DNA of 64,000 bases, from assembly GCF_009834535.1 (NCBI RefSeq), contig NC_045720.1:1364001-1428000 (forward strand), given 5' to 3'. Shown here one piece after another: positions 24,300 to 46,970 of this stretch. The stretch is from Camelus ferus (taxonomy: Eukaryota). The notes under the pieces are model-generated. The model worked only from the letters and a program-made list of their open reading frames with translations. It was not told the DNA's origin and did no database searches. How positions within the stretch are numbered: position 1 is the first letter of the stretch; every line of letters begins with the position of its first letter. Made by a program: the position numbers and the translations under genes.

Positions 24300-24620
24300 G
24301 CTGGACGCTTCCCCCGCCCCCCTCCGGCCCCGGCCCCGGCCCCACTGCCCCACGGCCCCCACCCCCACCGGCCCCCACCCCCGCACGCCCGAGTCCCGCC
24401 CAGGCTTTCTGGAACCTTCCCCGTCCCCCAACCCCTATCCTGCCCAATCCTCTGGACGCTTCCCCTGCACCCCTCCGTCCCCATCCCCCACCGGCCCCCA
24501 CCCCCGCACGCCCGAGTCCCGCCCAGGCTTTCTGGAACCTTCCCCCACCCCCTCTGTCCCCTCCCGCCATCCCCGCCCCCACCCTGTTTCCCGCCCAGGC
24601 TTTCTGGAACCTTCCTCCGT
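24300..24620. repeat. GC-rich minisatellite with perfect HSE cores TTCtgGAAccTTC at 24407, 24530, 24602
   Basis: Repeated ccgcccaggctTTCtgGAAccTTCc with variable C-rich linkers; two degenerate units (ctggacgcttcc). Confidence 0.95.
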
Positions 24621-24793
24621 CCCCCTGCCCGACCCAGTTCCCCGCCCCGAGCTTTGTGACCTTCCGCGGACACGACCTCGAGGGCCCGCACAGCCGGTGT
24701 GGCGCGGGGAGCCGCAGGTGGGCGAGGGGAGGCCGGGCGGGCTCCAGGCCCCGTTCTCTCAGCGGCAGGTCGGACGGGCGTCTCCCGACAGGC

Positions 24794-24862
24794 TTCGCGC
24801 GGCTTCCGGAAGGTTCGGCCTGGTCTCGGGGCGGCCCCGTTCCCCAGAGGCGCTTCCCTGAA
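24794..24862. promoter_or_regulatory. Promoter core: perfect HSE TTCcgGAAggTTC (24804-24816) with an in-register upstream TTC (24794), and GAS-type TTCcctGAA (24854-24862)
   Basis: Exact motif matches inside a CpG island; function inferred. Confidence 0.6.
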
Positions 24863-24877
24863 GGGCCCTGCTGCAGG

Positions 24878-25090
24878 GGAGGTTCCAGAAGGTCTGGGCG
24901 GGAAACGGGGTTGGGGGGGACGGTGGGAGGGGACAGAGGGGGTGGGGGAAGAGTCTAGAGGTCTGGGCGGGACAGGGGTGGGGGAGGGGGAAGACAGTCC
25001 CAGAAGGTCTGGGCAGAACATGGGGAGAAGGGGAACTCCAGAGAGAACCTCTGGGGGAGGTTCCAGAAAGCCTGGGCAGGACTGGGGCAG
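24878..25090. repeat. Opposite-orientation, more degenerate arm of the same minisatellite
   Basis: ggttccagaaggtctgggcgggaaacggggttgggggg...gaggggacagagggg resembles the reverse complement of 24545-24610. Confidence 0.85.
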
Positions 25091-28000
25091 TGGAGAGGAC
25101 TTCAGAGTGACCACGCCAAATGCTGGACAGGATACAAAGAAACCAGGTTGTTCCCGCATTGCTGGTTACATGAAAAAATGGCGCAGCAGGTGTGTAGAAC
25201 AGAGTGCAAGTTCCTTTAAAAACTGCTTATGCAATTACCATGAGATTCCCAAATCCACTTCTGGGTGATTTCCCCAGAGACACTGAAACTGTGTCCACAC
25301 AGAACACATCCATGGATGTTTACGGCAGCTTTATCTGAAATGCTCGGGAGAAAAACCCAGATGTCCTACAGTAGTGTGCAAACCACAGCACTCTCTCACG
25401 GAGGTGAGCTGCTCAGCAGGAAAAGCAAAAGTATTGCTGGACGTCCTGAGTTGACTGAATGCCTAGGGACTCATTCTTAATGACAAATGACACTCCACCA
25501 AGGTTACATAACACACTGTTCGTTTTGTATACCATTATAGGGATGACAAAGTTGCAGAAACGGACACCAAATCCATATCGCAGGGTCGCACTGTCTGGGG
25601 ATCTGGGCGGGAAAGAGATTGATGCGTCCTTAGGAGGGATGATTGTGGGGCCAACACCATTCTCTCCCCTCGCTTGGGGAGTGACACTAACCTAGTTAGT
25701 TGTGATACTATAGTTTTGCAAGATAGTGTCAGTGGGAATGACTGAGGAAAGCACACACAGGATCTTTCTGTGTTTTGTGCCCATATATTTGAATATACAA
25801 ACATCTCAAAGTAAAACGTTTAATGGAAAAGAAATTTTTAAACAACCAGATCATTACTTGCATTACTATTTAAATGGCTACAGTTAGGAACCCAAGATTT
25901 TTGGGATAGACAAAAGATAGTACGTTCTCTTTACTAGAGGCGTGCTTTAAAATAAGGACATGACAAGATTGAAAAAAATATATAGAAAAGGGTCTACAAT
26001 TTGAATGCTGCCCAAGGGACTCTTACACACACACTGAGGCTAAGTAAACATTAACACAAGAGCGTTACTTATGTGAAGAACCACATTTTGTAGAGGTGAA
26101 GGAATAAAATAGATACCACAGTCATCACAATCTAAATCCACACGTACCTGATAGCACAGGATGAAAATACCTTGGTAGAACTTAGGTTCTAGGTACTGTG
26201 GGCAAAACAAAAACAAAAACTAAAACAGTCGCATAGTTGTCATAAACTCATCTGTCTCCATGGATTCTGGACCCTGAAGCAAGGAGACAGAATTTATTGT
26301 AGCCCTGGACTACGGTCACCATCGTTCCTCTGAAAAGACCAGACAGTAAATGTCTTCAGCTTCAGAGGCTGTCCAGTCTCTGTCACTCCTACAAAACGTT
26401 CTCTTTGTGGGGCTGGAACCAGACACAGAGGATGAGTAACCGTACGATCGTCCCTATGATCCAGCAAAGCTTCCGTCACCGACACGTTGGTGGCCTGGGC
26501 TGATCCCACAGGCTCTTGTCTGCCAGCCCCTGCTACAGACGGTCTGAGCAACACTTGCCCAGCGTCGCCAGCCCTGGCACACACCTCGTGAGACTCGCAC
26601 GTCCCCCACCCCACCCCCAAGACAAGGACAAGAGTACTCGCTGCAGCGCCCCCCTGGGCTCGATAAAACCCAGAAGCAGCCCCGTGTCCATCCGCAGTGA
26701 AGTGAGGTGTGTCCATCGGTGGAAAGTACGCAACCGCGAGAGGGAGCGCCGCGCGGCCTCGCCAGGGGCAGGGCCGGACCGCACAGAGCCCCGCAGAGAA
26801 GAGGCGGCAGACGCAAAAACGAGCAGCGCAGGTGGATTTCCTTTCCGTTGATTCAAAAGCAGGCCGAGTCACGTGGAGGCTCGGAAAGCCGGGCGCTTCC
26901 TCCTCACCTCTGGCCGTGGCGCGTCTCGTGCCTGAGTCGAGGAACGGAGGGAGGAATGCGGGGCTTTCCACCCAGGCCTGCTTCTCGAGCAGGATGCTGC
27001 TCTGCGGTTACGTGCGCTTCGGGAGGGTCCGTGAAGCTGTCGCCCTGCGATTGTGCGCTTTTCTGTAGAATGTGGGTCTTTAGCAAGCTCTTTGGCACAA
27101 ACGGAAAATCAAGGAAAGCAGGTGCCTGGGGCGCAGCCGTCAGCACTTTCTGAGGCAGGCGAGGCCGCGCGAGTGGGTAGGTGCCCCCGGTGAGCTCCGG
27201 GAGGAGGTGTCTGTGTGAGACTGTGAGGCCCCAGGTTCCCCAACATGACTCCTGCATGAAAGTAGCAAATTTCTCACATGAAGTCTCAAACGGAAATTTC
27301 TGATGCGCCAGTAGCTCTTCCTCCTCCAGTGGTTGGAGATGTCATGTCCACGGTCTCCAGGCCAAGTAGCAAAGGGGAAGGAACACAGAGGGTCAGGACC
27401 ATCAAAGACACACGTGGCCTCTGCCCTGGTTCTGCCGGATAAACTGGGCTGCAGGAGCCCGCACACTGCAGTCTGTGGGTATAGGAAGTGCCTGGCATGA
27501 GTTGATACACAGCCAAACTTGTCTGCCATATTTAGCATCTTCAAAAGACTAGAAGTACTGTCTTTTAGTGAAAAAAACTCACTCCAGACCATGACCTTTG
27601 AAGTCAGAGGCTAAAGTAAATACATTGAGACCACTGATCTGACAACGTCTCTTCCCACAGAAACTTCTTCACCGAAAGTTTAAGTAATGACCACTAGAAA
27701 AAGTGGAATTTATCTCTAGGAGAGTTTTCAATGTAGAAAAGAATAGTGAGCCCAGGAAACATACACGTGTGAGTGAATGAAAACAACAAAATTCAAATCT
27801 ACGAATGGAGTGTAAGAAACAAGAACGTTAATTAAAATGGCTGTAAAGGTTCTGCAGTTTTTGTGTGTTCGCTGAGACCTGGGCAGCGTGGCCCACACTG
27901 ACGCACCAGCACACCAAGGGCAGGCTGTGACTCCCGGCTGCATCCTGGTCCAAGGGCAGCTCGTACACCACTTGGGGCTGAGGCCCACTGTACATCTCAG

Positions 28001-28109
28001 CCTTCCGAGGGGCCTTGGCAGTTCTGACTCACTGGCCCAACTGAATGAGGAGGGTGAGGAGCAGGGAATGAGTTAAATCAAAGTAATATTAGAAATGACA
28101 GTCATATTC

Positions 28110-28662
28110 TTCACAATAGCCAAGTCATGGAAGCCACCTGAATGTCCACTGACAGATGACTGGTTAAAGAAGCTGTGGTGTATTTATATACAATGGAACA
28201 TATACTCAGCCACGAAAAGGAATGAAATAATGCCATTTTTAGCAACATGGATCTACAGACGATCATACTAAGTGAAGTAAGTCAGAAAAAATAAAGTGTC
28301 ATGTGATATCACTTACAGGAGGAATCTAAAAAAGTGACAGAAACGAACTTATTTACAAAACAGAAAGAGATGCACACACATAAAAAACAAACTTGTGGTC
28401 ACCAGGGGGGAATGGAGGGAGGAAGTGATAAACTGGGAGTTTGGGATTGGCAGATACTAACTACTGTGTACAGAATAGATAAACAAGGTTCTCCTGTGCA
28501 GCACAGGGAACTATATTCAGTGGCTTGTAACCTGTAAGGAAAAGAATATGGGAAGAAATACATATATGTATAAGTGAATCATTATGCTGTACACCAGAAA
28601 TTAACATGTTGTAAGTCAACTAAACTTCAATTCTTAAAAAAATCAGAAAAAAAAAAAAAAAA
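28110..28662 (+). mobile_element. 5'-truncated L1 3' end with poly(A) tail
   Basis: gaatgaaataatgccatttttagcaacatggat...cacagggaactatattcag...ctgtacaccagaaattaac + A tail. Confidence 0.92.
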
Positions 28663-29201
28663 CCGCTCTGGGGACCCCCCCGCCCGAGGGCTGGCTCCAG
28701 CTATGTGCCTGCTGGAAAGGGTCCCTGGGAGAATGGGGAGCCCATGCCCACCCCCATCACAGCCTTGATGGGTTCCTCTGGGAGGACAAGTTCTGGGGAG
28801 AGAGGAAGACGGGGCCCTGAACAGAGGCCCCAAGTCGGGCAGGCAGAGACCTGTCATTGTCTACCTGAGGAGCAGCTCACAGGCCACCCCACCAATGACC
28901 CCATCTCCTGGGTGTTCACTGCCCCTTAGCTGGACCAGCAAGGCCAGATACACAGGGCCTCAGCCACATCGGTGCCCTGGCTGCCCCAGTGCCACCCAAG
29001 TGGTGTCTGGATTCCCCTGACTGGCCCCAAGGCACCGAAACCCCCCCACCAGGAGGGGTGCTTGCTAGCTCCTGACCTCCCCGCCCTGCACCCAGCACAA
29101 GGCCTGGGAAGAGCAGACAAGACACACAGGGTGTCAGGAAATTGGGGCAAAGCCCTCCCCACTGCTTCCTCCTCTGGTCCTTGTAGAAAAGATGAAAATA
29201 T

Positions 29202-29209
29202 CCAAGGTC
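29202..29209 (+). promoter_or_regulatory. CYP11B1: Ad4/SF-1 (NR5A1) site CCAAGGTC
   Basis: Consensus match 343 bp upstream of ATG, the position of the known CYP11B Ad4 element. Confidence 0.8.
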
Positions 29210-29412
29210 CCCATTCATCCCTTGATAAGATAAGGCACCTCTCCATCTTGCTGCTTTCCCTCACGGGAGAGAGGAGGGAGGCCTCCTTCCCCCACCCCGA
29301 CCCTATTTGGCCCCATCCCGACCCACCCCTGCTCTCAGCAGCCACCCACCGGCGGGCTGCGTCACTGCCAGACGAGGCAGCCGGCCATCTCTTTCATCCT
29401 CCCGCTGGACGC

Positions 29413-29428
29413 CTCCAGCCCTGACCGC
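29413..29428 (+). promoter_or_regulatory. CYP11B1: Ad5-like element ctccagccctgaccgc
   Basis: Resembles human Ad5 (CTCCAGCCTTGACCTT) at the equivalent position. Confidence 0.6.
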
Positions 29429-29466
29429 TGCCCTGGGTTTCCTGGTCTGGCCAGGGACAGCTTCTC

Positions 29467-29474
29467 TGACGTGA
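29467..29474 (+). promoter_or_regulatory. CYP11B1: Ad1/CRE TGACGTGA
   Basis: Matches the CYP11B Ad1 CRE, about 30 bp upstream of the TATA-like box. Confidence 0.85.
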
Positions 29475-29504
29475 TCAAGGCGGCCGGTCCAGCAAACTAG
29501 GCGA

Positions 29505-29511
29505 GATAAAA
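29505..29511 (+). promoter_or_regulatory. CYP11B1: TATA-like GATAAAA box
   Basis: GATAAAAG variant typical of CYP11B promoters. Confidence 0.75.
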
Positions 29512-29544
29512 GGACCGGGCCGAAAGGGGTGAGGGCGCACCAGC

Positions 29545-29783
29545 ATGGCGTTCCGGGCAAAGACCGCAGTGTGGAGGGCAGGGCCTTGGCTGTCCCTGCA
29601 CAGGGCACGCACACTGGGCACCAGAGCTGCTCAGGCCCCCAAGAAGGTGCTGCCCTTCGAAGCCATACCCCAGTGTCCTGGCAACAAGTGGATGCGGGCG
29701 CTGCAGATCTGGAGGGAGCACGGCTCCGAGAACATGCACCTGGACATGCATCAGACCTTCCAGGAGCTGGGACCCATTTTCAG
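29545..29783 (+). CDS. CYP11B1: Cytochrome P450 11B, mitochondrial: exon 1 (targeting peptide)
   Basis: [49 protein letters not shown]...FQELGPIFR; 239 nt, GTAAAG donor. Confidence 0.98.
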
Positions 29784-30156
29784 GTAAAGCTCTCCCTGAA
29801 CACCTCAGCGAGAACACCCTGACTGGTGGTGGTCCCGCTGGCCGCGGAGTCCTGGCTGGGCTCAGGGTTCTGCCACATCCAGTCCTGGCGGGGAGTCTGG
29901 GGAATGGGGGAAGGGGCAGGTAGGGGGCTCCGCAGGGCTGGTCTGTGCCTTCAACCCTGGAGACCGTGGCTCTCCGTGGAAACAGAGCACTGTGCAGCTT
30001 GCTGCTGGGAGGACAGAACGCAGACACCAGAGGAGGAGAGGCTTCAGTGAGACTGCAGGAGGGACTGCCTGGTCTGAGCCAGCTGCAGGCCGTCTCTGCA
30101 GTGGGGCCCAAGGGAGGCCACATCCCCAGAGCAGGGCCTCGAGCTTTGTCCCACAG

Positions 30157-30312
30157 GTATGACGTGGGAGGGAGGCGCATGGTATTCGTGATGCTGCCCG
30201 AAGACGTGGCGAGGCTGCAGCAGGCGGAGAGCTTTCACCCTCAGCGGATGCTCGTGGAGCCCTGGCTGGCCTACCGACAGCACCGTGGCCTCAAACGTGG
30301 CGTGTTCTTGCT
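30157..30312 (+). CDS. CYP11B1: CYP11B exon 2
   Basis: [22 protein letters not shown]...[19 protein letters not shown]; 156 nt, AG/GT. Confidence 0.98.
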
Positions 30313-31148
30313 GTGAGGGCGGGTTGGGGTGCAGGGGGTGGGCGGTGGGAAGCGTGGGTGCAGAGAGGAGGTGAGACAGGAGAGGCTCCAGCGCACACCC
30401 GCCTGGGGCCTCTCTAGGCAGGTGGAGAGAGGGTGACCGCCAGCTCCCGATGAGTGCCAGTCCCGAGGGGCTCAGGGGTGCCCCGGGCCGGGGAGGGGAG
30501 CAGGGGGCCTGGTGGGGACTCGAGCCAGGCCCTGTCCTCCAGGGAGAGGAAGAAGGCTAGGACTGCCATTCGGGAGCCCTCTCCAGCCTCCACAGGCCCC
30601 GAGGGGCTCGTGCACAGGTGGGACTTCTCGCCTTCTGCAGGTCAGACCCCCTGTAGGCCTGCAGGGAGCCCCCCCACCGTGGGCTCCGGGCTCTGTCCGG
30701 AGCCTGCTAGGAGAGCCCTGCTCTGATTCTCGCCCCGGAGGAGCGGAGGCTCTGTAGGGAGAGCAGCAGGTGGAACGGGCACGGGGCAGCGCACCCGAGC
30801 TGGGGATGAAGGTCTCCAGGGGCCGCTCCCACTCCGGGCTGTGGGTGAGCGTCGGAAAAGCCTCCACCCCGAGAGAGGGAGACGTGGGTGCCAGGGGCGG
30901 GGCCTGCCAGTTTGCACAAACAGTGGGGCCCGGCAGCAGCCTGGGCCGGGGCTCCCGTCTCAGCCTGGGCGAAGTGCACGAGGCCCCCCTGAGGAAAGAG
31001 GTGCTGCCAAGGCCCACGCGTGGGCAGCCGGCCCCCCGAGAACCAGCAGGCGGCTTGCCGCCCCGCCCGCCTCCCGTCGTGGGGGGGCACAGGGCTGGGG
31101 CCAGCTGCTGGCTCCGGATGCCCTGACGCTCTGCGCTCTGCTCTGCAG

Positions 31149-31348
31149 AAACGGGCCCAAGTGGCGCTCCGACCGGCTGCAGCTGAATCCGGACGTGCTG
31201 TCACTGCAGGCCGTGCAGAAGTTCGCGCCCCTGGTGGACGAGGTGGCCAGGGACTTCTCCCAAACCCTGAGGGCGAGGGTGGTGCAGAACGCCCGGGGGA
31301 GCCTGACCCTGGACATCAAGCCCAGCATCTTCTGCTACACCATCGAAG
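31149..31348 (+). CDS. CYP11B1: CYP11B exon 3
   Basis: [18 protein letters not shown]...[20 protein letters not shown]; 200 nt. Confidence 0.98.
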
Positions 31349-31476
31349 GTGTGGGCGTGCAGCGGGGGTGCCGCTCAGAGGCTCGGAGTGGGCCGGGGCT
31401 GGGGCAGGGAGGGCTAGGGGAGGCGGCCAGGAGGCCCTGGGCTGCCTCAGGCTCAGGAACTGCCTCCTCCCTGCAG

Positions 31477-31680
31477 CCAGCAACTTAGTCCTTTATGGAG
31501 AGCGGCTGGGCCTCCTCGGCCACAACCCGAATGCTGACAGCCTGAACTTCATCAGCGCGCTGGAGGCCATGTTCAAGTCCACAGTGCAGCTCATGTTCCT
31601 GCCCAGGAGCCTGTCACGCTGGACAAGCACCAGCATATGGAAGGAGCACTTCGAGGCCTGGGACTGTATCTTCCAGTATG
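31477..31680 (+). CDS. CYP11B1: CYP11B exon 4
   Basis: [14 protein letters not shown]...[14 protein letters not shown]; 204 nt. Confidence 0.98.
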
Positions 31681-31951
31681 GTGAGGGCCGAGGATCCAGC
31701 AGCATTGGGACCAGGGACCCCAGGGCCCCCTCCACTCACCACAGTCCAGGAGAGCAGAGGCCACGTGCCAGGGCTGGTGGCTTCTTTCTGGTCCCTGAGA
31801 GAGTGGGCAGGGAGGCTGGACTAGGCTGACCCTAAGAACTGGGGGTGGCACACGGAGACCTGGGGCTTCTGAGGGCTGAAGGGCAGGAGGGTGACAAAGA
31901 GAAGTGCCCCCAGCCCCAGGCCCAGGGCCTCTGTCTCTCTGGGCCCCACAG

Positions 31952-32106
31952 CCAACAAAGCCATCCAGAGACTCTATCAGGAGCTGACCCTTGGCCGCCC
32001 GTGGCGCTACAGTGGCGTCGTGGCAGAGCTGCTCATGCATGCAGACATGACCCTGGATGCCATCAAGGCCAACTCCATCGACCTCACTGCCGGGAGCGTG
32101 GACACG
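31952..32106 (+). CDS. CYP11B1: CYP11B exon 5 (I helix)
   Basis: [12 protein letters not shown]...YSGVVAELL...[13 protein letters not shown]; 155 nt. Confidence 0.98.
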
Positions 32107-33608
32107 GTCAGCCCAGCAGTCAGCCCTTCCCGTAGAACCGGGAGCCCTCCCCTTCCCATGCCAGACGGCTCGACCATGCCCCCTCCCCAGTCTGTGCCTC
32201 CAAAATGGCTAGACTTAGGCCTCAGCTTCTGAACTGAGAGGCGGAACATGGGCGCCAAGCCTCAGAGGGAAGGAGTTTGCAGCTCCTCCCGTGGGAAACC
32301 GTGCTCCAGGCAGAGGGTGCAGAGTGGATGAGGCCCAGGGGCATGCAGCTCCACAGACCCTGTGTGGATAATCTGGGTCCTGAGCCAATGGGGAAGAGCC
32401 AAGGTGCAGCAGAGAGCTGCACGGGGAGACCCCCCAGTGACAGATGACACTTAGCTCTCACCAAAGATCCTTTGGAGGGGACAGGCTGACGGGCAGGGCA
32501 GCACGGGGCTCCGGCTGGGGCGGGGGAGCAGGCGGCGGTACAGTGCGGCGGGCGGGGCGGGCTCCAGGGCGCAGGGCCGACGAACCTTCCTGCCTCTAGA
32601 CAGAGCCTTCATCTGCCAGCGTCTCTGAGGGCCTGCTCTGGGCCACGCACCCAGGATTCAGAGCAGAGGCACAGACCCATTGTGGAGAAACTCCCTGAGC
32701 AGGGGGTCTGTGACGCAGCCACCAGCTGAAAGAACCCAGGGGAGGGCATGTGCCTTCAGGGGGCAGCTCTGAGAGGAGGACTTCCTGGAGAAGGAGGGCT
32801 TTCCGTGGAATGCAGAAGAACCACACACAAGTCAGATGGGCCACGAAGAGGGGGCTGGGAGTGCAGCAGCCCGGGGCCAGCAACAGCAGACAGTGAAGAA
32901 AGGCCGTGAGGCTGAGTGGAGCCGACAGGGGCAGACAAGGGTCAGGACCCCTGGCAGTAGGGGCCTTGGGCACCAGGCCTGTATCCAAGGCTGGAGGAAG
33001 CCAGTGCAGGGAGTGCCTCGGTCAGATTTCTGCTCCCTCACGGGCCACAGGGCAGAGCACGGACTAAAGCTCAGGGCGCAGCCGAGAGGCTGTATCTGCC
33101 CATCAGAAGATGCCAGGGGCGTGCGTGTCGCCTTGGGGACGGCGTTCAGGAAAGACTTAGCTTCCCTCCCAGATTTTGGCCGGGGCTGGCAGACACCTCT
33201 CCCTGCACAGGGAAGTGATCCAGGAGGAGGAAAGGGGTAGGGTCTGGGACCTGCCTTTGGATGCCCAGGGGAGAAGCCCCACTGGGAGCAGTTAGACCTC
33301 GGGCTCCAGAACCCTCCCCCCTGAGTAGCTGGCAAGAGTGAGCCCCTCGTGGACACAGAGGAAGGTGAGAACCAGGCCCTGAAGTGGCTGGAGGAGGCCT
33401 GCATCTTCATTTGAGACTGGGGACACCTTCCCCGAGGGATTCAGGGGAAGTCGATGAGGTGGGTGGTTTTAGGCTTTTGAGGTCTCAGGTCTCTGGGCAC
33501 GCAGGTCCCCTGTCCCCAGGGGTGGCCATCTTTCTGGGGAGGGTGCCCTGGGGGTGGAGGGGTGTGGCCCGTGCCAAGGTCCGAGCCCTGCTCCCCTGGC
33601 TCCTGCAG

Positions 33609-33775
33609 ACAGCCTTTCCCTTGTTGATGACTCTCTTTGAGTTGGCTCGGAACCCGGATGTGCAGCAGGCCGTTCGCCAGGAGAGCCTGGTGGCTGAGGC
33701 CAGGATCTCTGAAAATCCCCAGAGGGCAACCACGGAGCTGCCACTGCTAAGGGCTGCCCTCAGGGAGACCTTGAG
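33609..33775 (+). CDS. CYP11B1: CYP11B exon 6
   Basis: [26 protein letters not shown]...[13 protein letters not shown] (ExxR); 167 nt. Confidence 0.98.
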
Positions 33776-34204
33776 GTAGGCGTGGTAGACCTTGGCTTCC
33801 CCAGATGCCCTGGCCCCAGTGTCTGGAGAGCCCACTCCCTAGGGCTTGAGGACAGATCCTGGGGCTGACAAGCAGCTTTGCCCGAGGACACATCCCCCTG
33901 TGCCTTCCCTTCCTCCCCTAAAAGGATGGGGTGCTTCTTCCTCTGGGATGCCACCTCAATGTCCTGGGCCGTCCTCCATCCCGTCCCCACTGGCCCGGGG
34001 CTGCTCAGGCTGGGGGAGCTTTGGCTGAGCTCCAGGCTGCCAGGAAGCAGCTGCTCAGGAGCGGGGCTTCCCAGTGCCAGAAGGGACCTGTGAGGGCAGT
34101 GGCCAGCTGCCCTTGGCCCATGAGTGCTGGGCCGGGAAGGCTGCAGAAGGGAAGTGAGGGGCCCTTTCACAGCGGAGGACCTTGTTGGACATCCCTATGC
34201 ACAG

Positions 34205-34283
34205 GCTGTACCCCGTGGGTATCACCGTGGAGCGACGGGTGAGCTCAGACTTGGTGCTGCAGAACTACCACATCCCGGCTGGG
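34205..34283 (+). CDS. CYP11B1: CYP11B exon 7
   Basis: [26 protein letters not shown]; 79 nt. Confidence 0.98.
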
Positions 34284-38939: not shown

Positions 38940-41420
38940 TCCAAGAATCCTCATCAAGTGACTAGCAAACCACATCCAGCAGCATGTAAAATGAATTCTA
39001 CATTCCGGACCAGTGGAATTCATCCCAGGAGTAAAGGTTGGCTTAATACCCCCAAGTCAAGGACTTGCCATCGGACAATAACCCCGTCCGTAGCATACAG
39101 AGGAAAATCACACTCCCACCTTCACAGACGCAGAAAGAGCATTTAACAAAAGTCAGCGCTGCTGCCGTGGTAAGAAATACTCCACAAACCGGGAGTAGAA
39201 GGGACTTTCTTCAACTGATAAAGGACATCCATTGAAAGCCCACAGCTAACACCATTCTGAAGAGGGAAGGACTGGCTGCTGTCCTAAGATTAGGAACAAG
39301 CATGCCTGCTCTGACTGCTCCCATTCACCATAGTCCTGGAGGTTCTAGCCAGAGCAGTTAGGCTCTCAGAATGAGCGGAAGTCATCCAAGTTGGAACGGA
39401 AGGAGGAAAACTCTCTCTATTCACAGATCATATGATCTTGTCTAGAAAACGTCCTAAGGAAATCATTTTAAAAGTACTATGCCTAATGGAGTCGTCCAGC
39501 AATATCTCAAGATACAAGTACATGATCCAAAATCAGTCGTATTTCTCTTCATTTGTAATGCCAAATCCGAAAATACAATTAAGAAACCCATTCCATTTTG
39601 CAAGAGCATCAAAAAGAGTGTAACACCTAGGAATTAAAAGATGTCCAAAATTTATACTCAGAAAACCACAAAGCACCGTGGATAGAAATTAAAGAAGAGC
39701 TACAGAGTTGGAAAGCATCCTGCACCCACGAATCAGAAGATGCTGTCTTGCTCCCGTGGCGACACTCCTCATACTGGTCTCCAGACTCGATGCAACCCCT
39801 ATGAAGACTCCAGCGGACTTCTTCGTAGAAAGTGCCAGGCTGATTCTAAAATTCACAGGGAACGCAAAGAACCTAGAATAGGAACATACTCTTAAAAAAG
39901 GACAAAGTAGGAGGACTCACACCTCCTGATTTCAAAACTTACTACAAAGCCACATTAATCAAGACAGTGTGGTCCTGGCACCAGGACAGACGGATAGACC
40001 AGTGGAGGAGGACTGAGAGCCCAGGGATGACACGGCCCCTCTGTGGTCAACTGAGCTCTCATCAGGGTGCCAGGAGCAACCAGTGGGAAGAATCTATTTT
40101 CAAGCAATGATGTGGGGACAACTTTATAGCCATGTGGAGAAAACAAAACTGGACTTTACTTCAGACCAGATACGAAAACTAACTCCAGTGGACCAACGTC
40201 CTAATCATGAGAGCTAACACTGTAAAACCTTAGAAGGAATCATAAAGGTAACTCTTCAGGATCCTGGATCTTGCAAAGGATTCTTACATATGACAGGCAG
40301 GGAATGAGCACCAAATGAAAAACCAGAGACTCTGGACTTCATCAATGCTAAAAACGTTTGTTCTCGAAAGGACACTCCCAAGAGAGTGAAAAGACAAGCC
40401 ACAGAAGGGGGGGGAAGTATTTGCAAATCATATGACTGATAAGATCCTTGTGTTCTGAGTATACACAGTGTGATTACAACTCAGTAGTCAACAGACAACC
40501 CAACTGTTAATTGGGAAAATTATTTGAAGGGACATTTCTCCAAGGAAGCTGCCCTAACAGATGACTAACACACATGTGAAAAGATGCTCAGACTCATGAG
40601 CCATCAGGGAAGTGCAAGTCAAATGACGGTGAGGTGCCCCACACACCCACTCAGAGGGCCAGAATCAAGAAACCAGGAAACATCAAGTGCTGGTGAGGAG
40701 TGGAGAGAGCAGAACCTCACCCATCGCTGGTGGAGATGTAAAATGGTGCAGCCACTTTGGGAACAGCCTGACAGCTCTTCAAATGCTTGCCGAGTGAATG
40801 CAGGACCCAACCACTCCACCACTAGGCATACACCCAAGAGAATTAAAGACCTATGTCCACATAAACATCTTTACACACGTGTTGACAGCAGCATTATCCA
40901 TAATGACCAAAGGTAGGAACAACCCAAATGCCTATCAACTGAAGGAGAGATAAACCAAATGAAGTGTAACCATACAGTGGAGTATTATTTAGCCAGGAAA
41001 AGGAAGTGCTGAAACACACCACAACATGGATGAACTGTGAAAGCGTTGTGGTAAGTTAAAGAAGCCAGTCACAGAAGACTCCACATTATCTGATTCTATT
41101 CACAGGAAATGTCCAGGACAGGGAAACTTACAGGGATAGGAAGTACATTACTGGTTGCCTAGTGATGGGAGGGTGTGCGGGGAGGGGTGAGCCTGGGCAG
41201 TACAAAGGGATAATCACTAAACGGGTATGAAGTTTCTTTTCGAGGTGATATAAATATTCTAAAATTGACTATGGTGATGGTTGACATATCTGTGAATAAA
41301 CTAAAAATTACTGAATTGCATACATTAAATGAGCGAACGGCACAGTATGTAAACTATCTCAATAAAGTTATTTAAACAAACAAAGGAACAAAGTGATGAC
41401 ACAGTTGCCCTGTGGGTGAA
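38940..41420 (+). mobile_element. Old L1 ORF2 3' half and 3'UTR, degraded
   Basis: Continuous L1 ORF2-like sequence (ggaggactcacacctcctgatttcaaaacttactacaaagc; gaaaagatgctca...). Confidence 0.9.
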
Positions 41421-41499
41421 CCCTGAAATAAGTGTGCCAAGTGAGAGAAGCCAGACACAAAAGGCCAAGGATCTCACAGTTCCTTCTGTGTGGAACATC

Positions 41500-42005
41500 G
41501 AGGGATGGATGATTCCAAGTGACAGTGCAGCTAAGCTCTGGTGTTCAGCTCATTGGTCAGGCACCAATCTACATGTTGCTCCGAAGGTATTTTTCAATGC
41601 AATTAAGTTCTTAATCAGAGGACTTTGAGTAAAGCAGATTATCCACCATAACGTGGGTGGGCCTCACCCAGTCAGATGAAGGCCTTAAGAGCAAAGACCG
41701 AGGATCTCCAAAGTAGAAGACAATCTCCCTGGAGGCTGACAACACAGACACCCTGCCTGGGTTTCCAGCCTACAGCCTTGTGGAATTCAGCTTCAAGGCT
41801 ACCACACAATCCTCAGCGGAATTTCTAACCTGCCACCCTGCCCTACAGATTTGAGGCCTGCCGGCACCTGCAAGCAGGTGGACCAGTTCCTGAAAACAAT
41901 TGCCTCCTTCCACTGTCTTCTCTTTCTCTCTCCCCTCTTCCCTCCACCCCTCCCTCTCTCACAACAGATACTCATGTCTCCCATTGGTTCTGTTTCTCTG
42001 CCAGA
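41500..42005 (+). mobile_element. ERVL solo LTR (MLT2-like) inserted in the L1 3' end
   Basis: gactttgagtaaagcagattatccaccataacgtgggtgggcctcacccagtcagatgaaggccttaaga...cccattggttctgtttctctg. Confidence 0.85.
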
Positions 42006-42671
42006 GATACCCAGCACAGGCAAATCCACTGTGACCAAAAGCAGCTTAGTGGTTGCCAAGGACTGTGGAGGGTGAATGGGGAGTGACTGCATGTTCGATG
42101 CAGGGCTTCCTTTGGGGCAGAAGATATTCTGGACTCAGACAGTGGTGATGGCTGCACAGCACTGTGAATGTACTAGAAGACACTGAATTACACCCTTGTG
42201 GAACACTGAGTGCGATGGAATGTGAATTTCAGCTCAGTCACTTCAACTCGGGTACTGATATAAAGAAGGAGAGCGAAGACAGTCTGACTCCTGTTCCGTC
42301 CACACCTTTTTCTGATACCGGCCATGTGTACGCCGAGAGTGACGACAGCAGCCTGGATCGACATATCCCCTGCCACTTCAAGGACGTCACCGGCTGGCTT
42401 CAGGGCCCCCACCCTTCTAGGATGTCAGCATCTGGGGACACATTCTGTCACATGTAGGAAGCCAGTGGCCACCTCGAGAGATGGCTCGAGTCCCATAGAA
42501 CCTGCCTGACCGACCCACGCAGGGCGCTGGACACAGTCTCCATGGCTGGCCCTAATCCACTCATGTACCACCACGTAGCTGGGCACCCTCTCTGCTTCTG
42601 TTGTTCCAACCTGGAAACTGGAAAGATGGAGGCTCAGGTGGTCTCAGGTACCCGTGGTCCAAGTCGAGCTG

Positions 42672-44672
42672 GGACCAGTCTTCCCGCGGGCATGTAGACT
42701 ATGCCCTGGGGCTGTTTCGTTTTTGACTAAAATACTCAATCTCTGTTCCCTCAAGTGGCAATATACTTTTGTCCGTGTGTGAGTGGTGCCTAACAAGGAA
42801 AACAACGGATCAGAGCTAACACCACAAAGAAATCCGAGTACACAATACCCAAACCATCATGCTCTTTATTTCTCCCTCCAAACAAGCCCTAAATGGGTGA
42901 CTTGCCAACTGGGGACCCCGTGGGTCACTGTCTCTGGCTCACAAAAGAGCAAAGGACAGCCAACTGGCTCTGGGGAATGGGGAGATGGTAAGACCCTCCA
43001 AAGGCAGCTTCTCATGTCAGTGTATTGCTGACCGCAATGGAGGCAAAGCTCAGGAAAAAGGTTGACTGCCCTAATCGCACAGTTCCTTCCAATTCCTCCT
43101 CAACTGTCATTTCGGGGAGGATGTCCCTCTCAAGATTACTAATACCCCCCTCGTTGCAGGTCATACTATTACAGCAATGAACAAAATAGAAAGAGTTAGA
43201 ACGAAAGTATTTTCTCCTGGGGGCTTCAGGAGGCTGCTGAGAGGGGTGCACAAATGTGCAGTTGTTTGTGCAGTTCTTGTAAACGAATAATTCACGTTCA
43301 TCGTAACCTAAAAAAGTAAAGATGACAATCATTGATTTCTCGTTTTCTGCTTGCAAATATCAAAGCACGTTTATCTTAACTAGCTCCATCCCTCACGTGT
43401 TGTTACACTGCCTGAAATTCTTGATTGAGAAGACAATCCAAGTCCACTAAGGGTTCGGTGACTCCATGACACCTTCTCCTGGAGATGTTGTCTCGCTACA
43501 CTGCCACCTCATCTCTGTATCTGGCCTCCCTATGAAGCTTCCTGGTGCCTGGTCACGGAGCTGTACAAACGCATCGTCCTGTTCACCATTTGCTCTAAGA
43601 ATTCTAGGGATCCGGAAGCAGAACGGAGCCCAGGAAACATGTTTTGCTGATGTCCCAAGGTCACACAGACCCTCCAAGCAGAGGGCCCTTGTCATCTGGC
43701 CTCCAGCTGACTTTCTGCAGCTGGCCTCACCCTGCTAGAACAGGCTCCCGCCGCACCCCTCTGCCTGCCGTTCCCCGCCCCCGGCCCAGCACGGAGGCTG
43801 ACGCACAATCACACCCACCTGCTCCCCAGTGCAGCCCTGGTGCCCCGTCCCAAGTACAGTCCCACTGGGACGCCTGTGAGCGCCTTCGCTGGAGGACTGG
43901 CCAGTGACCTCGACCAGCCAAAGCCCTGTTCAGGCTCCACCTGAGGCCTGGCTCGAGAGTCCCTGAGTTAAGCTGCCGCGGCCTCACTCACCAGTTCTGT
44001 GCCCCTGGCCTCACACAGACACCTCCTCCCGGAGCTCACCGGGGGCACCTACCCACTCGCGCGGCCTCGCCTGCCTCAGAAAGTGCTGACGGCTGCGCCC
44101 CAGGCACCTGCTTTCCTTGATTTTCCGTTTGTGCCAAAGAGCTTGCTAAAGACCCACATTCTACAGAAAAGCGCACAATCGCAGGGCGACAGCTTCACGG
44201 ACCCTCCCGAAGCGCACGTAACCGCAGAGCAGCATCCTGCTCGAGAAGCAGGCCTGGGTGGAAAGCCCCGCATTCCTCCCTCCGTTCCTCGACTCAGGCA
44301 CGAGACGCGCCACGGCCAGAGGTGAGGAGGAAGCGCCCGGCTTTCCGAGCCTCCACGTGACTCGGCCTGCTTTTGAATCAACGGAAAGGAAATCCACCTG
44401 CGCTGCTCGTTTTTGCGTCTGCCGCCTCTTCTCTGCGGGGCTCTGTGCGGTCCGGCCCTGCCCCTGGCGAGGCCGCGCGGCGCTCCCTCTCGCGGTTGCG
44501 TACTTTCCACCGATGGACACACCTCACTTCACTGCGGATGGACACGGGGCTGCTTCTGGGTTTTATCGAGCCCAGGGGGGCGCTGCAGCGAGTACTCTTG
44601 TCCTTGTCTTGGGGGTGGGGTGGGGGACGTGCGAGTCTCACGAGGTGTGTGCCAGGGCTGGCGACGCTGGGC
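42672..44672 (+). repeat. Segmental direct duplication copy 2 (pairs with 14870-16870)
   Basis: Offset 27802; diverges from copy 1 after 44672. Confidence 0.97.
43012..43307 (-). pseudogene. GML: Orphan GML last exon (upstream exons absent)
   Basis: Same translation as 15210-15505 (two synonymous changes), intact acceptor and poly(A) signal (42865-42870); no copies of the other GML coding exons to the right. Confidence 0.9.
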
Positions 44673-46970
44673 AAGTGTTGCTCAGACCGTCTGTAGCAGG
44701 GGCTGGCAGACAAGAGCCTGTGGGATCAGCCCAGGCCACCAACGTGTCGGTGACGGAAGCTTTGCTGGATCATAGGGACGATCGTACGGTTACTCATCCT
44801 CTGTGTCTGGTTCCAGCCCCACAAAGAGAACGTTTTGTAGGAGTGACAGAGACTGGACAGCCTCTGAAGCTGAAGACATTTACTGTCTGGTCTTTTCAGA
44901 GGAACGATGGTGACCGTAGTCCAGGGCTACAATAAATTCTGTCTCCTTGCTTCAGGGTCCAGAATCCATGGAGACAGATGAGTTTATGACAACTATGCGA
45001 CTGTTTTAGTTTTTGTTTTTGTTTTGCCCACAGTACCTAGAACCTAAGTTCTACCAAGGTATTTTCATCCTGTGCTATCAGGTACGTGTGGATTTAGATT
45101 GTGATGACTGTGGTATCTATTTTATTCCTTCACCTCTACAAAATGTGGTTCTTCACATAAGTAACGCTCTTGTGTTAATGTTTACTTAGCCTCAGTGTGT
45201 GTGTAAGAGTCCCTTGGGCAGCATTCAAATTGTAGACCCTTTTCTATATATTTTTTTCAATCTTGTCATGTCCTTATTTTAAAGCACGCCTCTAGTAAAG
45301 AGAACGTACTATCTTTTGTCTATCCCAAAAATCTTGGGTTCCTAACTGTAGCCATTTAAATAGTAATGCAAGTAATGATCTGGTTGTTTAAAAATTTCTT
45401 TTCCATTAAACGTTTTACTTTGAGATGTTTGTATATTCAAATATATGGGCACAAAACACAGAAAGATCCTGTGTGTGCTTTCCTCAGTCATTCCCACTGA
45501 CACTATCTTGCAAAACTATAGTATCACAACTAACTAGGTTAGTGTCACTCCCCAAGCGAGGGGAGAGAATGGTGTTGGCCCCACAATCATCCCTCCTAAG
45601 GACGCATCAATCTCTTTCCCGCCCAGATCCCCAGACAGTGCGACCCTGCGATATGGATTTGGTGTCCGTTTCTGCAACTTTGTCATCCCTATAATGGTAT
45701 ACAAAACGAACAGTGTGTTATGTAACCTTGGTGGAGTGTCATTTGTCATTAAGAATGAGTCCCTAGGCATTCAGTCAACTCAGGACGTCCAGCAATACTT
45801 TTGCTTTTCCTGCTGAGCAGCTCACCTCCGTGAGAGAGTGCTGTGGTTTGCACACTACTGTAGGACATCTGGGTTTTTCTCCCGAGCATTTCAGATAAAG
45901 CTGCCGTAAACATCCATGGATGTGTTCTGTGTGGACACAGTTTCAGTGTCTCTGGGGAAATCACCCAGAAGTGGATTTGGGAATCTCATGGTAATTGCAT
46001 AAGCAGTTTTTAAAGGAACTTGCACTCTGTTCTACACACCTGCTGCGCCATTTTTTCATGTAACCAGCAATGCGGGAACAACCTGGTTTCTTTGTATCCT
46101 GTCCAGCATTTGGCGTGGTCACTCTGAAGTCCTCTCCACTGCCCCAGTCCTGCCCAGGCTTTCTGGAACCTCCCCCAGAGGTTCTCTCTGGAGTTCCCCT
46201 TCTCCCCATGTTCTGCCCAGACCTTCTGGGACTGTCTTCCCCCTCCCCCACCCCTGTCCCGCCCAGACCTCTAGACTCTTCCCCCACCCCCTCTGTCCCC
46301 TCCCACCGTCCCCCCCAACCCCGTTTCCCGCCCAGACCTTCTGGAACCTCCCCTGCAGCAGGGCCCTTCAGGGAAGCGCCTCTGGGGAACGGGGCCGCCC
46401 CGAGACCAGGCCGAACCTTCCGGAAGCCGCGCGAAGCCTGTCGGGAGACGCCCGTCCGACCTGCCGCTGAGAGAACGGGGCCTGGAGCCCGCCCGGCCTC
46501 CCCTCGCCCACCTGCGGCTCCCCGCGCCACACCGGCTGTGCGGGCCCTCGAGGTCGTGTCCGCGGAAGGTCACAAAGCTCGGGGCGGGGAACTGGGTCGG
46601 GCAGGGGGACGGAGGAAGGTTCCAGAAAGCCTGGGCGGGAAACAGGGTGGGGGCGGGGATGGCGGGAGGGGACAGAGGGGGTGGGGGAAGGTTCCAGAAA
46701 GCCTGGGCGGGAACCGGGAATGCGGGGGTGGGGGCCGGTGGGGGATGGGGACGGAGGGGTGCAGGGGAAGCGTCCAGAGGATTGGGCAGGATAGGGGTTG
46801 GGGGACGGGGAAGGTTCCAGAAAGCCTGGGCGGGAAACAGGGTGGGGGCGGGGATGGCGGGAGGGGACAGAGGGGGTGGGGGAAGGTTCCAGAAAGTCTG
46901 GGCGGGACTCGGGCGTGCGGGGGTGGGGGCCGGTGGGGGTGGGGGCCGTGGGGCAGTGGGGCCGGGGCCG
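44010..46970 (+). repeat. Inverted repeat, right arm (pairs with 24325-27219)
   Basis: Coordinate sum 71229; differs only inside the minisatellite (extra 72-bp unit). Confidence 0.97.

What the first reader, a model, noticed from the sequence alone, without database searches (positions are those of the whole stretch)
24325..46970. Near-identical ~2.9-kb inverted repeats bracket the only intact CYP11B: an inversion-prone cassette
Seen: paired coordinates sum to 71229 from 24517/46712 to 27219/44010 with identical ORF translations, so there are no indels and I saw no substitutions in that stretch. The ~16.8-kb spacer holds CYP11B with its promoter and the orphan GML exon. Established: highly identical inverted repeats mediate recurrent NAHR inversions and gene conversion. 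Inference: CYP11B orientation may be polymorphic while both Ly6 promoters are preserved. Caveat: the assembly has gaps, so the identity could be a repeat-resolution artefact.
Basis: partly seen in the sequence, partly recalled or inferred. Interest (0 to 1): 0.7.

Follow-up and report, generated by a model that had tools for sequence, protein, structure and literature searches.

The report
Self-correcting inverted repeats flank camel CYP11B
In camels, two inverted repeats of about 3 kb bracket the only intact steroid 11-beta-hydroxylase gene; they are real, are kept identical by copying between the two repeats, and the bracketed block lies the other way round in alpaca, so this is a new example of a well-known kind of invertible structure.

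Summary
Observation confirmed. Window 24517-27219 is the exact reverse complement of 44010-46712 (2703 bp, no mismatch or indel). Imperfect homology runs out to 24180/47112 through a minisatellite. The 16,790-bp spacer holds an intact 9-exon CYP11B gene (503 aa) and a spare copy of the last GML exon.

The window is Camelus, most likely C. ferus. The identity is not an assembly artefact. Gap-free assemblies of C. bactrianus and C. dromedarius show the same structure, with 0 and 2 arm-to-arm substitutions. Eleven lineage-specific substitutions and one indel sit in both arms of the lineage that carries them, which indicates ongoing arm-to-arm gene conversion.

Each arm is a fusion of 663 bp of GML intron 2 ("c") and about 2.4 kb of LY6K upstream sequence ("e"). 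Pig and whale outgroups show that arm 2 is in the ancestral place and arm 1 is the derived copy.

In alpaca the same cassette has the opposite orientation relative to LY6K, and the junctions at the edges of the repeat are conserved. That points to at least one repeat-mediated inversion in camelid history. All four Camelus assemblies share one orientation, so present-day polymorphism is untested.

Verdict: a real, new member of a known kind (inverted-repeat or palindrome inversion substrate). Interest is moderate.

The parts
24180..27219 (.). Arm 1, the derived copy. It has three parts: an outer imperfect minisatellite part (24180-24516), the e' part (inverted copy of LY6K upstream sequence, to 26556), and the c' part (inverted copy of 663 bp of GML intron 2, 26557-27219). 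The stretch 24517-27219 is perfectly identical to arm 2.
   Evidence: it carries the derived c|e fusion in inverted orientation
44010..47112 (.). Arm 2. It consists of c (44010-44672) fused to e (44673-47112). The e part is collinear with the pig LY6K upstream region, so it lies in its ancestral place.
27220..44009 (.). The 16,790-bp spacer, which is the invertible cassette S1. It holds the CYP11B upstream region, the CYP11B gene, its downstream region 'x', and the spare last GML exon.
29545..34824 (+). Intact CYP11B gene. Exons: 29545-29783, 30157-30312, 31149-31348, 31477-31680, 31952-32106, 33609-33775, 34205-34283, 34380-34577, 34711-34824. The product is 503 aa.
   Evidence: canonical GT/AG sites, no stop; 100% to P0230; Pfam p450 on the exon 8 ORF
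43012..43307 (-). Spare ('orphan') copy of GML exon 3. It differs from the exon at 15210-15505 at 2 synonymous sites and encodes the same peptide. In alpaca, the exon at this position is the working last exon of GML.
16208..16870 (.). Third copy of c, in its ancestral place inside GML intron 2. It is in direct orientation to the c of arm 2 and inverted to the c' of arm 1, with 5 mismatches to both.
   Evidence: the whale sequence is collinear across 16870/16871
14870..16870 (.). Copy A of a 2001-bp direct repeat (b+c: GML exon 3 plus part of intron 2). It is 99.35% identical to 42672-44672, with 13 mismatches and no gaps.
42672..44672 (.). Copy C of the 2001-bp direct repeat. It overlaps the inner 663 bp of arm 2.
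15210..20084 (-). GML gene. Coding exons are 20018-20084, 19293-19400 and 15210-15505. It is intact and gives a 156-aa product.
14022..14862 (+). Remnant of a second CYP11B gene ('a'): exons 8-9 with a 4-codon deletion, plus some downstream sequence. It is 93-96% identical to the matching parts of the intact gene.
52079..54488 (+). LY6K coding region, from the ATG exon at 52079 to the last exon (54204-54488). The last exon is 98% identical to the C. dromedarius protein.

Best explanation
This is a small autosomal palindrome in a Camelus genome, most likely C. ferus. Two inverted arms of about 3 kb flank a 16.8-kb cassette that holds the sole intact CYP11B gene and a spare last GML exon.

Shown:
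- Each arm is a composite of 663 bp of GML intron 2 (c) fused to about 2.4 kb of LY6K upstream sequence (e, ending in a CpG-rich minisatellite).
- Arm 2 lies where pig has its LY6K upstream sequence.
- Arm 1 carries the same derived c|e fusion in reverse, so it is the copy.
- The structure is present in C. ferus, C. bactrianus and C. dromedarius.
- Within each species the arms are identical or nearly so, whereas between species they differ at 4-11 sites, and nearly all lineage-specific changes are present in both arms.
- In alpaca the LY6K-side repeat abuts the CYP11B 5' flank instead of the GML exon, while the sequences at the edges of the repeat are unchanged.

Inferred:
- Arm-to-arm gene conversion keeps erasing differences between the arms.
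- The same pairing occasionally resolves as a crossover and flips the cassette (intrachromatid non-allelic homologous recombination, NAHR). This has happened at least once since camels and alpaca diverged.
- In Camelus a flip should be nearly silent. CYP11B would carry its own 2.3-kb upstream flank, would meet an identical arm beyond it, and GML would keep its own exon 3.
- Arm 1 probably arose by copying that started in the old minisatellite homology shared by the GML and LY6K upstream regions and ran inward to 27219.
For: - Exact repeat.
- Species of origin: LY6K is 98% identical to dromedary and 95% to alpaca. CYP11B is 100% identical to the C. ferus / C. dromedarius XP sequence and differs by 2 aa from C. 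bactrianus.
- Same arrangement in other assemblies: gap-free loci L005 (C. bactrianus, GCA_048773025.1), L006 (C. dromedarius, GCA_036321535.1) and L004 (CamDro3).
- Arm against arm within each assembly: ferus 2703/2703; bactrianus 2218 matches, 0 mismatches and one 2-bp indel; dromedary 2698 matches, 2 mismatches and 1 indel, all within 60 bp of the inner edge.
- Concerted evolution: 11 substitutions and 1 indel are lineage-specific and present in both arms. They are ferus 24956, 26503, 26648, 26906; bactrianus 26821; dromedary 24725, 26435, 26830; ferus+bactrianus 24764, 25017, 26649, 27169.
- Expected divergence: at the ferus-dromedary flank divergence of 0.54%, independently evolving arms should differ at about 14.6 sites, giving P(0) = 5e-7.
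- Alpaca repeats: the two alpaca c copies are 99.3% alike but about 94.4% like the camel c copies. They form a clade with 100/100 support, although the c'|CYP11B-flank and e|c junctions are shared with camels.
- Polarity: pig LY6K upstream is collinear with 45266-52945. Whale GML intron 2 is collinear across 16870/16871. Gray whale is collinear with the window from 21240 through CYP11B to 42271 and lacks e'/c'.
- Alpaca orientation: L003 1-4900 matches window 51846-46970, 4850-25025 matches 24380-44612, and 25024-25294 matches 16887-17157. The junctions are conserved.
Against: - All four Camelus assemblies have the cassette in the same orientation, so nothing shows that it flips on a population timescale.
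- I could see only 25 kb of the alpaca locus. The full alpaca arrangement (GML upstream side) is unknown, so the number and order of events is a model, not a result.
- I do not know the sequencing technology behind the comparison assemblies. An inversion between short repeats is a classic misassembly, though a 0.66-kb repeat should be easy for long reads.
- The mechanism that made arm 1 is inferred only from a fuzzy outer edge in a minisatellite and a sharp inner edge. The repeated CTCACA-like motif at the inner junction is weak evidence.
Confidence: 0.75

Rival explanations
1. Assembly artefact. One collapsed repeat contig was placed twice, so the perfect identity, or the second arm itself, is not real.
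For: The window has two N gaps. Perfect identity over 2.7 kb is what a collapsed repeat placed twice would look like. CamDro3 (L004) has an error-ridden fill exactly in the e' part of arm 1, which shows that this repeat did trouble at least one assembler.
Against: The gaps are more than 11 kb away. Three other assemblies from two other species have both arms with the same four flanking junctions. Two of them tell the arms apart, by a 2-bp indel in C. bactrianus and by 2 substitutions plus 1 indel in C. dromedarius. The window's assembler resolved the third copy, which differs at 5 of 663 sites, and the 2-kb repeat at 99.35% identity. Species-specific substitutions occur in both arms of each species.
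Confidence: 0.03
2. A very recent duplication. The arms are identical only because one was copied from the other a short time ago, with no continuing exchange.
For: Zero differences over 2703 bp.
Against: The same arms, with the same junctions, exist in dromedary and in both Bactrian species, so the duplication predates their split. Changes that arose after the splits are in both arms. The inner c'/c pair is shared with alpaca and is also homogenised there.
Confidence: 0.03
3. The repeat is real and converts, but it is not inversion-prone. On this view the alpaca difference comes from another route (duplication followed by differential loss, a non-homologous rearrangement, or an alpaca misassembly), and the Camelus cassette is effectively fixed in one orientation.
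For: All four Camelus assemblies share one orientation. In the human Y palindrome P6, 146 conversion events were found against only 3 inversions (PMC3723533). Alpaca carries a 76-bp deletion at its c|d junction, and its far side was not seen. The CYP11B remnant 'a' predates the camel-alpaca split, so two CYP11B copies did once exist.
Against: The 20-kb alpaca cassette is contiguous with, and orthologous to, the Camelus cassette: 95.5% identity, including region x, which copy A lacks. Both of its ends sit at the same repeat edges, as expected for recombination inside the repeat. A deletion alone cannot join the LY6K-side arm to the CYP11B 5' flank.
Confidence: 0.17

Closest known systems
[quoted passage not shown] 2014, PMC3961182; Giner-Delgado et al. 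2019, PMC6748972)
   Same: Inverted repeats of kilobase size and high identity flank a segment of tens of kb. That study covered repeats of 1.6-24 kb and inversions of 5.1-226 kb, so 2.9-kb arms around 16.8 kb fall inside the range. Breakpoints lie within the repeats. Orientation differs between related species. Some of those inversions swap exons between paralogous genes, which resembles the spare GML exon here.
   Different: No second orientation has been shown within any Camelus species here. The evidence is a comparison between lineages (alpaca against Camelus) plus concerted evolution.
Sex-chromosome palindromes with arm-to-arm gene conversion (human Y P6, Hallast et al. 2013, PMC3723533; primate X palindromes, Jackson et al. 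2021, PMC8327919)
   Same: Arm identity is above 99.9% and is maintained by gene conversion. The arms evolve in concert. Spacer inversions arise by intrachromatid NAHR and are commonly seen between species (about 50% of the comparable X palindromes).
   Different: This structure is autosomal. Its arms are about 3 kb rather than more than 8-10 kb. The arms hold no genes or known RNA; the gene lies in the spacer. There is no testis gene family.
FLNA-EMD inversion at human X palindrome P24 (Small et al. 1997, as cited in PMC8327919)
   Same: Single-copy genes lie in a spacer between near-identical inverted repeats, and the inversion is neutral because no gene is cut.
   Different: That case has 11-kb arms and is an X-linked polymorphism proven in a population (from my own knowledge and from the citation). 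Here the polymorphism is untested.
Human CYP11B1/CYP11B2 tandem pair and its unequal crossover (chimeric gene of glucocorticoid-remediable aldosteronism; my own knowledge, not checked here)
   Same: It is the same gene family and the same chromosomal neighbourhood (GML, Ly6 genes). Repeat-driven recombination reshapes the locus.
   Different: In human the repeats are direct and include the genes themselves, so recombination gives chimeras or copy-number change. In camels the second CYP11B copy has decayed to a remnant, and the active repeats are inverted and non-coding.

Membership tests
Inverted-repeat (NAHR) inversion substrate / palindrome with arm-to-arm conversion | Two copies in inverted orientation on one chromosome around a unique spacer | tested here: met
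   also seen in L004, L005 and L006
Inverted-repeat (NAHR) inversion substrate / palindrome with arm-to-arm conversion | Arm identity far above that of flanking paralogous or orthologous sequence, over a length well beyond the few hundred bp needed for homologous recombination | tested here: met
   2703/2703 bp, compared with 99.35% for the neighbouring direct repeat and 0.54% ferus-dromedary divergence in the flanks
Inverted-repeat (NAHR) inversion substrate / palindrome with arm-to-arm conversion | Concerted evolution: the arms are more alike within a species than the same arm is between species | tested here: met
   12 lineage-specific changes shared by both arms, against 2 substitutions and 2 indels private to one arm; alpaca c copies form a clade, 100/100
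Inverted-repeat (NAHR) inversion substrate / palindrome with arm-to-arm conversion | Both spacer orientations observed, with breakpoints inside the repeats | tested here: met
   Met between lineages only. In alpaca the LY6K-side repeat abuts the CYP11B 5' flank; in Camelus it abuts GML exon 3. The sequences at the repeat edges are conserved. This rests on one alpaca assembly.
Polymorphic inversion (segregating within a species) | Both orientations present among individuals of one species | not testable with these tools
   Only one assembly was available for each of C. ferus, C. bactrianus and alpaca, and two for dromedary. All the Camelus assemblies are alike.
Large sex-chromosome palindromes | Arms longer than about 8 kb that carry multi-copy testis-expressed genes on X or Y | tested here: not met
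   The arms are about 3 kb. Their ORFs have no Pfam domain and they contain no Rfam family. The locus is the autosomal CYP11B/Ly6 cluster.
CYP11B (steroid 11-beta-hydroxylase / aldosterone synthase) gene | A full-length P450 reading frame with a heme-binding exon, orthologous to annotated CYP11B1 | tested here: met
   9 exons, 503 aa, no stop; 100% identical to XP_006173082.1; Pfam p450 E=2.5e-21 on the exon 8 ORF

The most novel reading that the evidence does not exclude
The locus may be a two-segment flip-flop. Three copies of the 663-bp element c alternate in orientation and delimit two invertible segments. S1 holds CYP11B and one GML exon 3. S2 holds GML exons 1-2 and their upstream region. 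On this reading Camelus and alpaca are the two states in which GML is complete, each using a different but peptide-identical last exon. The orientations might still segregate in living camelids, which would move the only 11-beta-hydroxylase gene between the GML-side and LY6K-side regulatory neighbourhoods. The model predicts that alpaca carries, upstream of GML, the minisatellite, then e', c', an inverted exon 3 and the CYP11B remnant.
Probability: 0.2. Interest if true: 0.65.

Novelty: new member of a known kind. Interest (0 to 1): 0.45.

Why it matters
CYP11B is the only enzyme for the last steps of cortisol and aldosterone synthesis, and in camels the single intact copy lies inside a recombination-active structure. 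[quoted passage not shown] One long read, or a long PCR, can span it, so it would be a convenient natural system for measuring conversion against crossover outside the sex chromosomes.

There is also a practical point. The 2-kb direct repeat at 14870-16870 and 42672-44672 brackets the GML 5' exons and CYP11B. Unequal recombination between those copies would delete the gene, and short-read genotyping in this region will be unreliable.

The result does not change what is known about mechanism. The kind of structure and its behaviour are well described in primates.

Tried and rejected
Look-ups that failed: camelid LY6K proteins P0070, P0053 and P0054, C. bactrianus CYP11B1 isoform X2 (P0135), and the second CamDro3 CYP11B model (P0234) are not on record as gene products. 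I therefore could not place that second dromedary model.

The GML exon-3 search returned no camelid protein, so I had no id with which to fetch the alpaca GML upstream side. The spliced 156-aa protein has no reference, and I did not type it in. All capped look-ups are now used.

I set aside arm 1 of CamDro3 (L004). Its e' part shows about 7% mismatches and many indels against every other sequence, while its c' part is clean, so it looks like uncorrected long-read fill.

Models rejected:
- A single inversion with staggered breaks (inverted duplications at the breakpoints) does not reproduce the segment order.
- One inversion between the arms does not turn the Camelus order into the alpaca order, because alpaca has d, not e, after the cassette's c.

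Model kept only as a less likely alternative: an alpaca-like ancestor, then tandem duplication by unequal crossover between the two minisatellites, then an inversion between c copies. Both whales share the Camelus order GML - minisatellite - CYP11B, and the predicted leftover to the left of the remnant is not in the window.

Negative searches: Pfam on six ORFs in the arms and Rfam on 24000-47300 found nothing. Pfam on ten ORFs in 1-12 kb found nothing. Literature searches found no description of this camel structure.

N gaps: BLAST tables listed whale matches on either side of the gap at 12485-12694. I did not read or use that sequence.


Full report
**1. What is in the window**

The repeat finder reports inverted arms 24348-27219 and 44010-46881 with 16,790 nt between them. 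Position by position, with coordinate sum 71229, the stretch 24517-27219 equals the reverse complement of 44010-46712 over 2703 bp, with no mismatch and no indel. A further 115 matching bases lie outside that (24394-24508), and beyond them similarity is lost in this register. Gapped blastn carries the homology to 24180-27219 against 47112-44010 (96.2%, 11 gaps). The imperfect outer part is a GC-rich minisatellite with different unit numbers in the two arms. The inner edge is abrupt. The only N runs are 8851-9080 and 12485-12694.

**2. Genes**

- CYP11B: I rebuilt it on the + strand as 9 exons (29545-34824). Every junction has a canonical GT/AG solution, and the product is 503 aa with no internal stop. 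It is 100% identical to the protein filed as C. ferus XP_006173082.1 and C. dromedarius XP_010998542.2, and differs by 2 residues from C. bactrianus and by 5 from alpaca.
- LY6K: it lies on the + strand (ATG exon at 52079, last exon 54204-54488). The last exon is 98% identical to dromedary and 95% to alpaca.
- GML: it lies on the - strand (exons 20018-20084, 19293-19400, 15210-15505) and is intact at 156 aa.
- Spare GML exon: a second copy of the last GML exon lies in the spacer (43012-43307). It has two synonymous differences and encodes the same peptide.
- CYP11B remnant: the only other CYP11B sequence is a remnant of exons 8-9 at 14088-14455.
- Species: an old C. ferus gene model (EPY89771) matches that remnant at 100%. 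The window is therefore Camelus, most likely C. ferus.

**3. Anatomy of the arms and a third copy**

The window's self-comparison shows a 2001-bp direct repeat, 14870-16870 against 42672-44672 (99.35%, 13 mismatches, no gaps). It overlaps the inner 663 bp of arm 2. That 663-bp element therefore exists three times:
- copy A, 16208-16870, inside GML intron 2;
- copy B, 26557-27219, inverted, at the inner end of arm 1;
- copy C, 44010-44672, at the inner end of arm 2.

B and C are identical, and A differs from both at 5 sites.

I use these letters for the segments:
- a: the CYP11B remnant;
- b: GML exon 3 and its flanks;
- c: the 663-bp element;
- d: the rest of GML and its upstream region, to about 24179;
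- e: 44673-47112;
- f: 27220-42671, which is CYP11B with its flanks. Its last part, x, is the sequence downstream of GML exon 3;
- g: LY6K and its upstream region;
- m: the minisatellite at the outer end of e; e1: the rest of e. These two letters are used in section 6.

The window then reads a b c d e' c' f b c e g, where a prime marks an inverted segment.

**4. Which parts are ancestral**

- The pig LY6K upstream region (L002) is collinear with window 45266-46505, the minisatellite, and 46979-52945. So e-g is an old adjacency, and arm 2 lies where e has always been.
- The sperm whale GML locus (L001) is collinear with window 21721-14873. One of its copies runs straight across 16870/16871. So c-d is the old adjacency, and the c|e junction at 44672/44673 is a derived fusion.
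- Arm 1 contains that same derived fusion in reverse. At least the part spanning the junction must therefore have been copied from the LY6K side.
- The gray whale CYP11B locus (L007) is collinear with the window from 21240 through 24295, a minisatellite, then 27879-28068 and 28692-42271. Whales therefore share the Camelus order of GML (pointing left), minisatellite, CYP11B (pointing right). They have about 2.9 kb of unrelated sequence where camels have e'c'.
- The whale GML upstream minisatellite and about 140 bp beside it also match the pig and camel LY6K upstream regions in the same gene-relative orientation. An old, short inverted homology therefore existed at the outer ends before the arms grew.
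- This fits a model, which I infer and have not shown, in which copying started in that homology and ran inward to 27219.

**5. Is the identity real? Comparison with other camelid assemblies**

Through a chain of protein searches I obtained camelid CYP11B1 ids and fetched the gene with 10 kb on each side from four assemblies, all gap-free in this region:
- C. bactrianus, GCA_048773025.1 (L005);
- C. dromedarius, GCA_036321535.1 (L006);
- C. dromedarius CamDro3 (L004);
- alpaca, GCA_048564905.1 (L003).

L005 is collinear with window 19615-46229 at 99.8%. L006 and L004 are collinear too, apart from lacking 39879-42671. The flank junctions d|arm 1, arm 1|f, b|arm 2 and arm 2|g are present and identical or nearly so.

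Over the tract that is perfect in the window, the two arms compare as follows within each assembly:
- C. bactrianus: 2218 matches, 0 mismatches and one 2-bp indel.
- C. dromedarius (L006): 2698 matches, 2 mismatches and 1 indel, all within 60 bp of the inner edge.

Between species the arms differ at 4-11 sites. Eleven substitutions and one indel are specific to a lineage and present in both arms of that lineage:
- ferus: 24956, 26503, 26648, 26906;
- bactrianus: 26821;
- dromedary: 24725, 26435, 26830;
- the ferus+bactrianus stem: 24764, 25017, 26649, 27169.

The structure predates the dromedary-Bactrian split. Arms evolving independently should therefore differ by at least the flank divergence of 0.54%, which is about 14.6 sites, and the chance of seeing none is about 5e-7. 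This pattern is concerted evolution, that is, repeated arm-to-arm gene conversion. It also disposes of the artefact explanation, because other assemblies resolve the arms as separate and slightly different copies yet show the same near-identity. I disregarded arm 1 of CamDro3 because its e' part is riddled with indels.

**6. Alpaca has the cassette the other way round**

L003 reads as follows:
- 1-4900 matches window 51846-46970 (LY6K upstream, inverted).
- 4850-25025 matches 24380-44612 (e' c' f b c, contiguous, 95.5%).
- 25024-25294 matches 16887-17157 (d).

Alpaca is therefore g' e' c' f b c d. The part seen holds a single e. An inverted pair c'/c of about 604 bp flanks the cassette. GML is complete, using the exon 3 that is the 'orphan' in camels; the alpaca annotation has a 156-aa product starting at that exon.

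Anchored on LY6K and its repeat, the inner end of the repeat abuts the CYP11B 5' flank in alpaca but abuts GML exon 3 in Camelus. The sequences across the repeat edges (c'|f, b|c, e|c) are the same in both. That is the signature of recombination inside the repeat. A deletion cannot produce it.

The strands in the chromosome records agree with this. CYP11B is on the + strand near the distal end in alpaca. It is on the - strand near the same end in C. bactrianus and CamDro3. This assumes that the chromosome records are oriented the same way.

The two alpaca c copies are 99.3% alike but only about 94.4% like the camel copies, and they form a clade with 100/100 support. The inner repeat has therefore been converting in the alpaca lineage as well.

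Because alpaca continues with d after the cassette's c, one flip is not enough. The simplest path I found is two inversions, each bounded by inverted c (or b+c) copies: one of S1 = [f b], the other of S2 = [d m e1']. With the whales as outgroup, the Camelus order looks ancestral and the alpaca order derived. This model predicts m e1' c' b' a' upstream of alpaca GML, which I could not fetch.

An alternative is tandem duplication by unequal crossover between the two minisatellites followed by one inversion between c copies. It also needs an inversion, and it fits the whale data less well. The remnant a is as far from alpaca f (93.4%) as from camel f (93.1%), whereas the two f copies are 97.5% alike. 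The second CYP11B copy is therefore older than the camel-alpaca split.

**7. What it does**

I found nothing functional in the arms. Their ORFs have no Pfam domain and they contain no Rfam family.

The arms lie at these distances from the genes:
- the outer edge of arm 1 is 4.1 kb from the GML ATG;
- the outer edge of arm 2 is 5.0 kb from the LY6K ATG;
- the inner edge of arm 1 is 2.3 kb upstream of the CYP11B ATG.

Two parts of the arms are CpG-rich. The outer ~0.9 kb has GC 0.72 and CpG observed/expected 0.54. The c element has GC 0.61 and observed/expected 0.78.

A flip of the Camelus cassette would leave CYP11B with its own 2.3-kb flank and an identical arm beyond it, and GML would keep its own exon 3. 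Such a flip should be close to neutral; this is an inference.

**8. Comparison with known systems**

The size class matches human inversions mediated by inverted repeats (repeats of 1.6-24 kb, inversions of 5.1-226 kb, often recurrent and differing among apes; PMC3961182). The behaviour matches sex-chromosome palindromes:
- arm identity above 99.9% through conversion;
- spacer inversion by intrachromatid NAHR;
- about half of the comparable X palindromes inverted between primate species (PMC8327919);
- many conversions but few inversions in Y palindrome P6 (PMC3723533).

That last point is why identity alone does not prove frequent inversion.

This structure differs in being autosomal and short-armed, with no genes in the arms and one essential single-copy gene in the spacer. 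Searches found no paper describing it.

**9. Verdict**

- Gene conversion is shown by comparative data.
- Inversion is shown between lineages, on the strength of one alpaca assembly.
- Polymorphism within a species is untested.
- The structure is a new member of a known kind, of moderate interest.

Noticed in passing
window 14870-16870 and 42672-44672: A 2001-bp direct repeat (99.35%, no gaps) brackets GML exons 1-2, arm 1 and the whole CYP11B gene. Unequal recombination between the two copies would delete or duplicate the only intact CYP11B. The 13 differences are spread evenly along the repeat, and the two that fall in GML exon 3 are synonymous.
   Followed up: partly
window 39879-42671; L004 and L006 near 20336/20347: Both dromedary assemblies lack this 2.8-kb stretch downstream of CYP11B. 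They join 39878 to 42672, which is the same junction as in the window's copy A (14862/14870). Gray whale has most of the stretch (matches reach window 42271). This suggests either conversion from copy A to copy C in dromedary or a parallel deletion.
   Followed up: partly
window 14022-14862: A CYP11B pseudogene remnant (exons 8-9, 4-codon deletion) lies tail to tail with GML, which is the human-like position. It is equally distant from camel and alpaca CYP11B, so the duplication predates the camel-alpaca split. An old C. ferus gene model (EPY89771) wrongly spliced these pseudo-exons, and a piece at 9849-9956, onto the real gene.
   Followed up: partly
L004 (CamDro3) about 4845-6990: The e' part of arm 1 in CamDro3 has about 7% mismatches and dense indels against every other camelid copy, and the noise stops exactly at the e|c junction. 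It looks like uncorrected long-read gap fill. That assembly should not be used for identity estimates at this locus.
   Followed up: yes
L001 (sperm whale) 16001-24733: The sperm whale has a tandem partial duplicate of GML intron 2, exon 3 and downstream sequence, followed by inverted pieces of intron 2. The GML 3' end is therefore a site of repeated duplication and inversion in whales too. This assembly has N gaps in the region.
   Followed up: no
L003 (alpaca) 25024/25025 and the whole locus: Alpaca lacks 76 bp across the c|d boundary (window 16811-16886), which shortens its inverted pair to about 604 bp. The alpaca annotation also carries a 375-aa Ly6-domain product on the - strand that runs over both ends of the 25-kb locus. 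It is probably a GML-to-LY6K read-through model, which is possible only in the alpaca orientation.
   Followed up: no
L005 (C. bactrianus) 1-5479, roughly window 19615-25021: A 277-aa minus-strand gene model on the GML side has its 5' end inside the CpG-rich outer part of arm 1. That part of the arm may act as an alternative transcription start. The dromedary annotation also calls the spare GML exon as a 106-aa single-exon gene (L006 20687-21007).
   Followed up: no
window 24180-24295 and 46969-47112; L001 2931-3441; L002 4241-4681; L007 5507-5740: The minisatellite and about 140 bp beside it occur upstream of GML in both whales and upstream of LY6K in pig and camel, in the same orientation relative to each gene. 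This is an old shared upstream module of two different Ly6 genes.
   Followed up: partly
window 1-12400: A GC-rich region (0.58-0.67 over 1-6 kb) to the left of the pseudogene remnant has ORFs up to 416 aa with no Pfam match. A weak signal-peptide-like match to GML proteins lies at 3836-3898 on the + strand (E about 0.4-0.9).
   Followed up: partly
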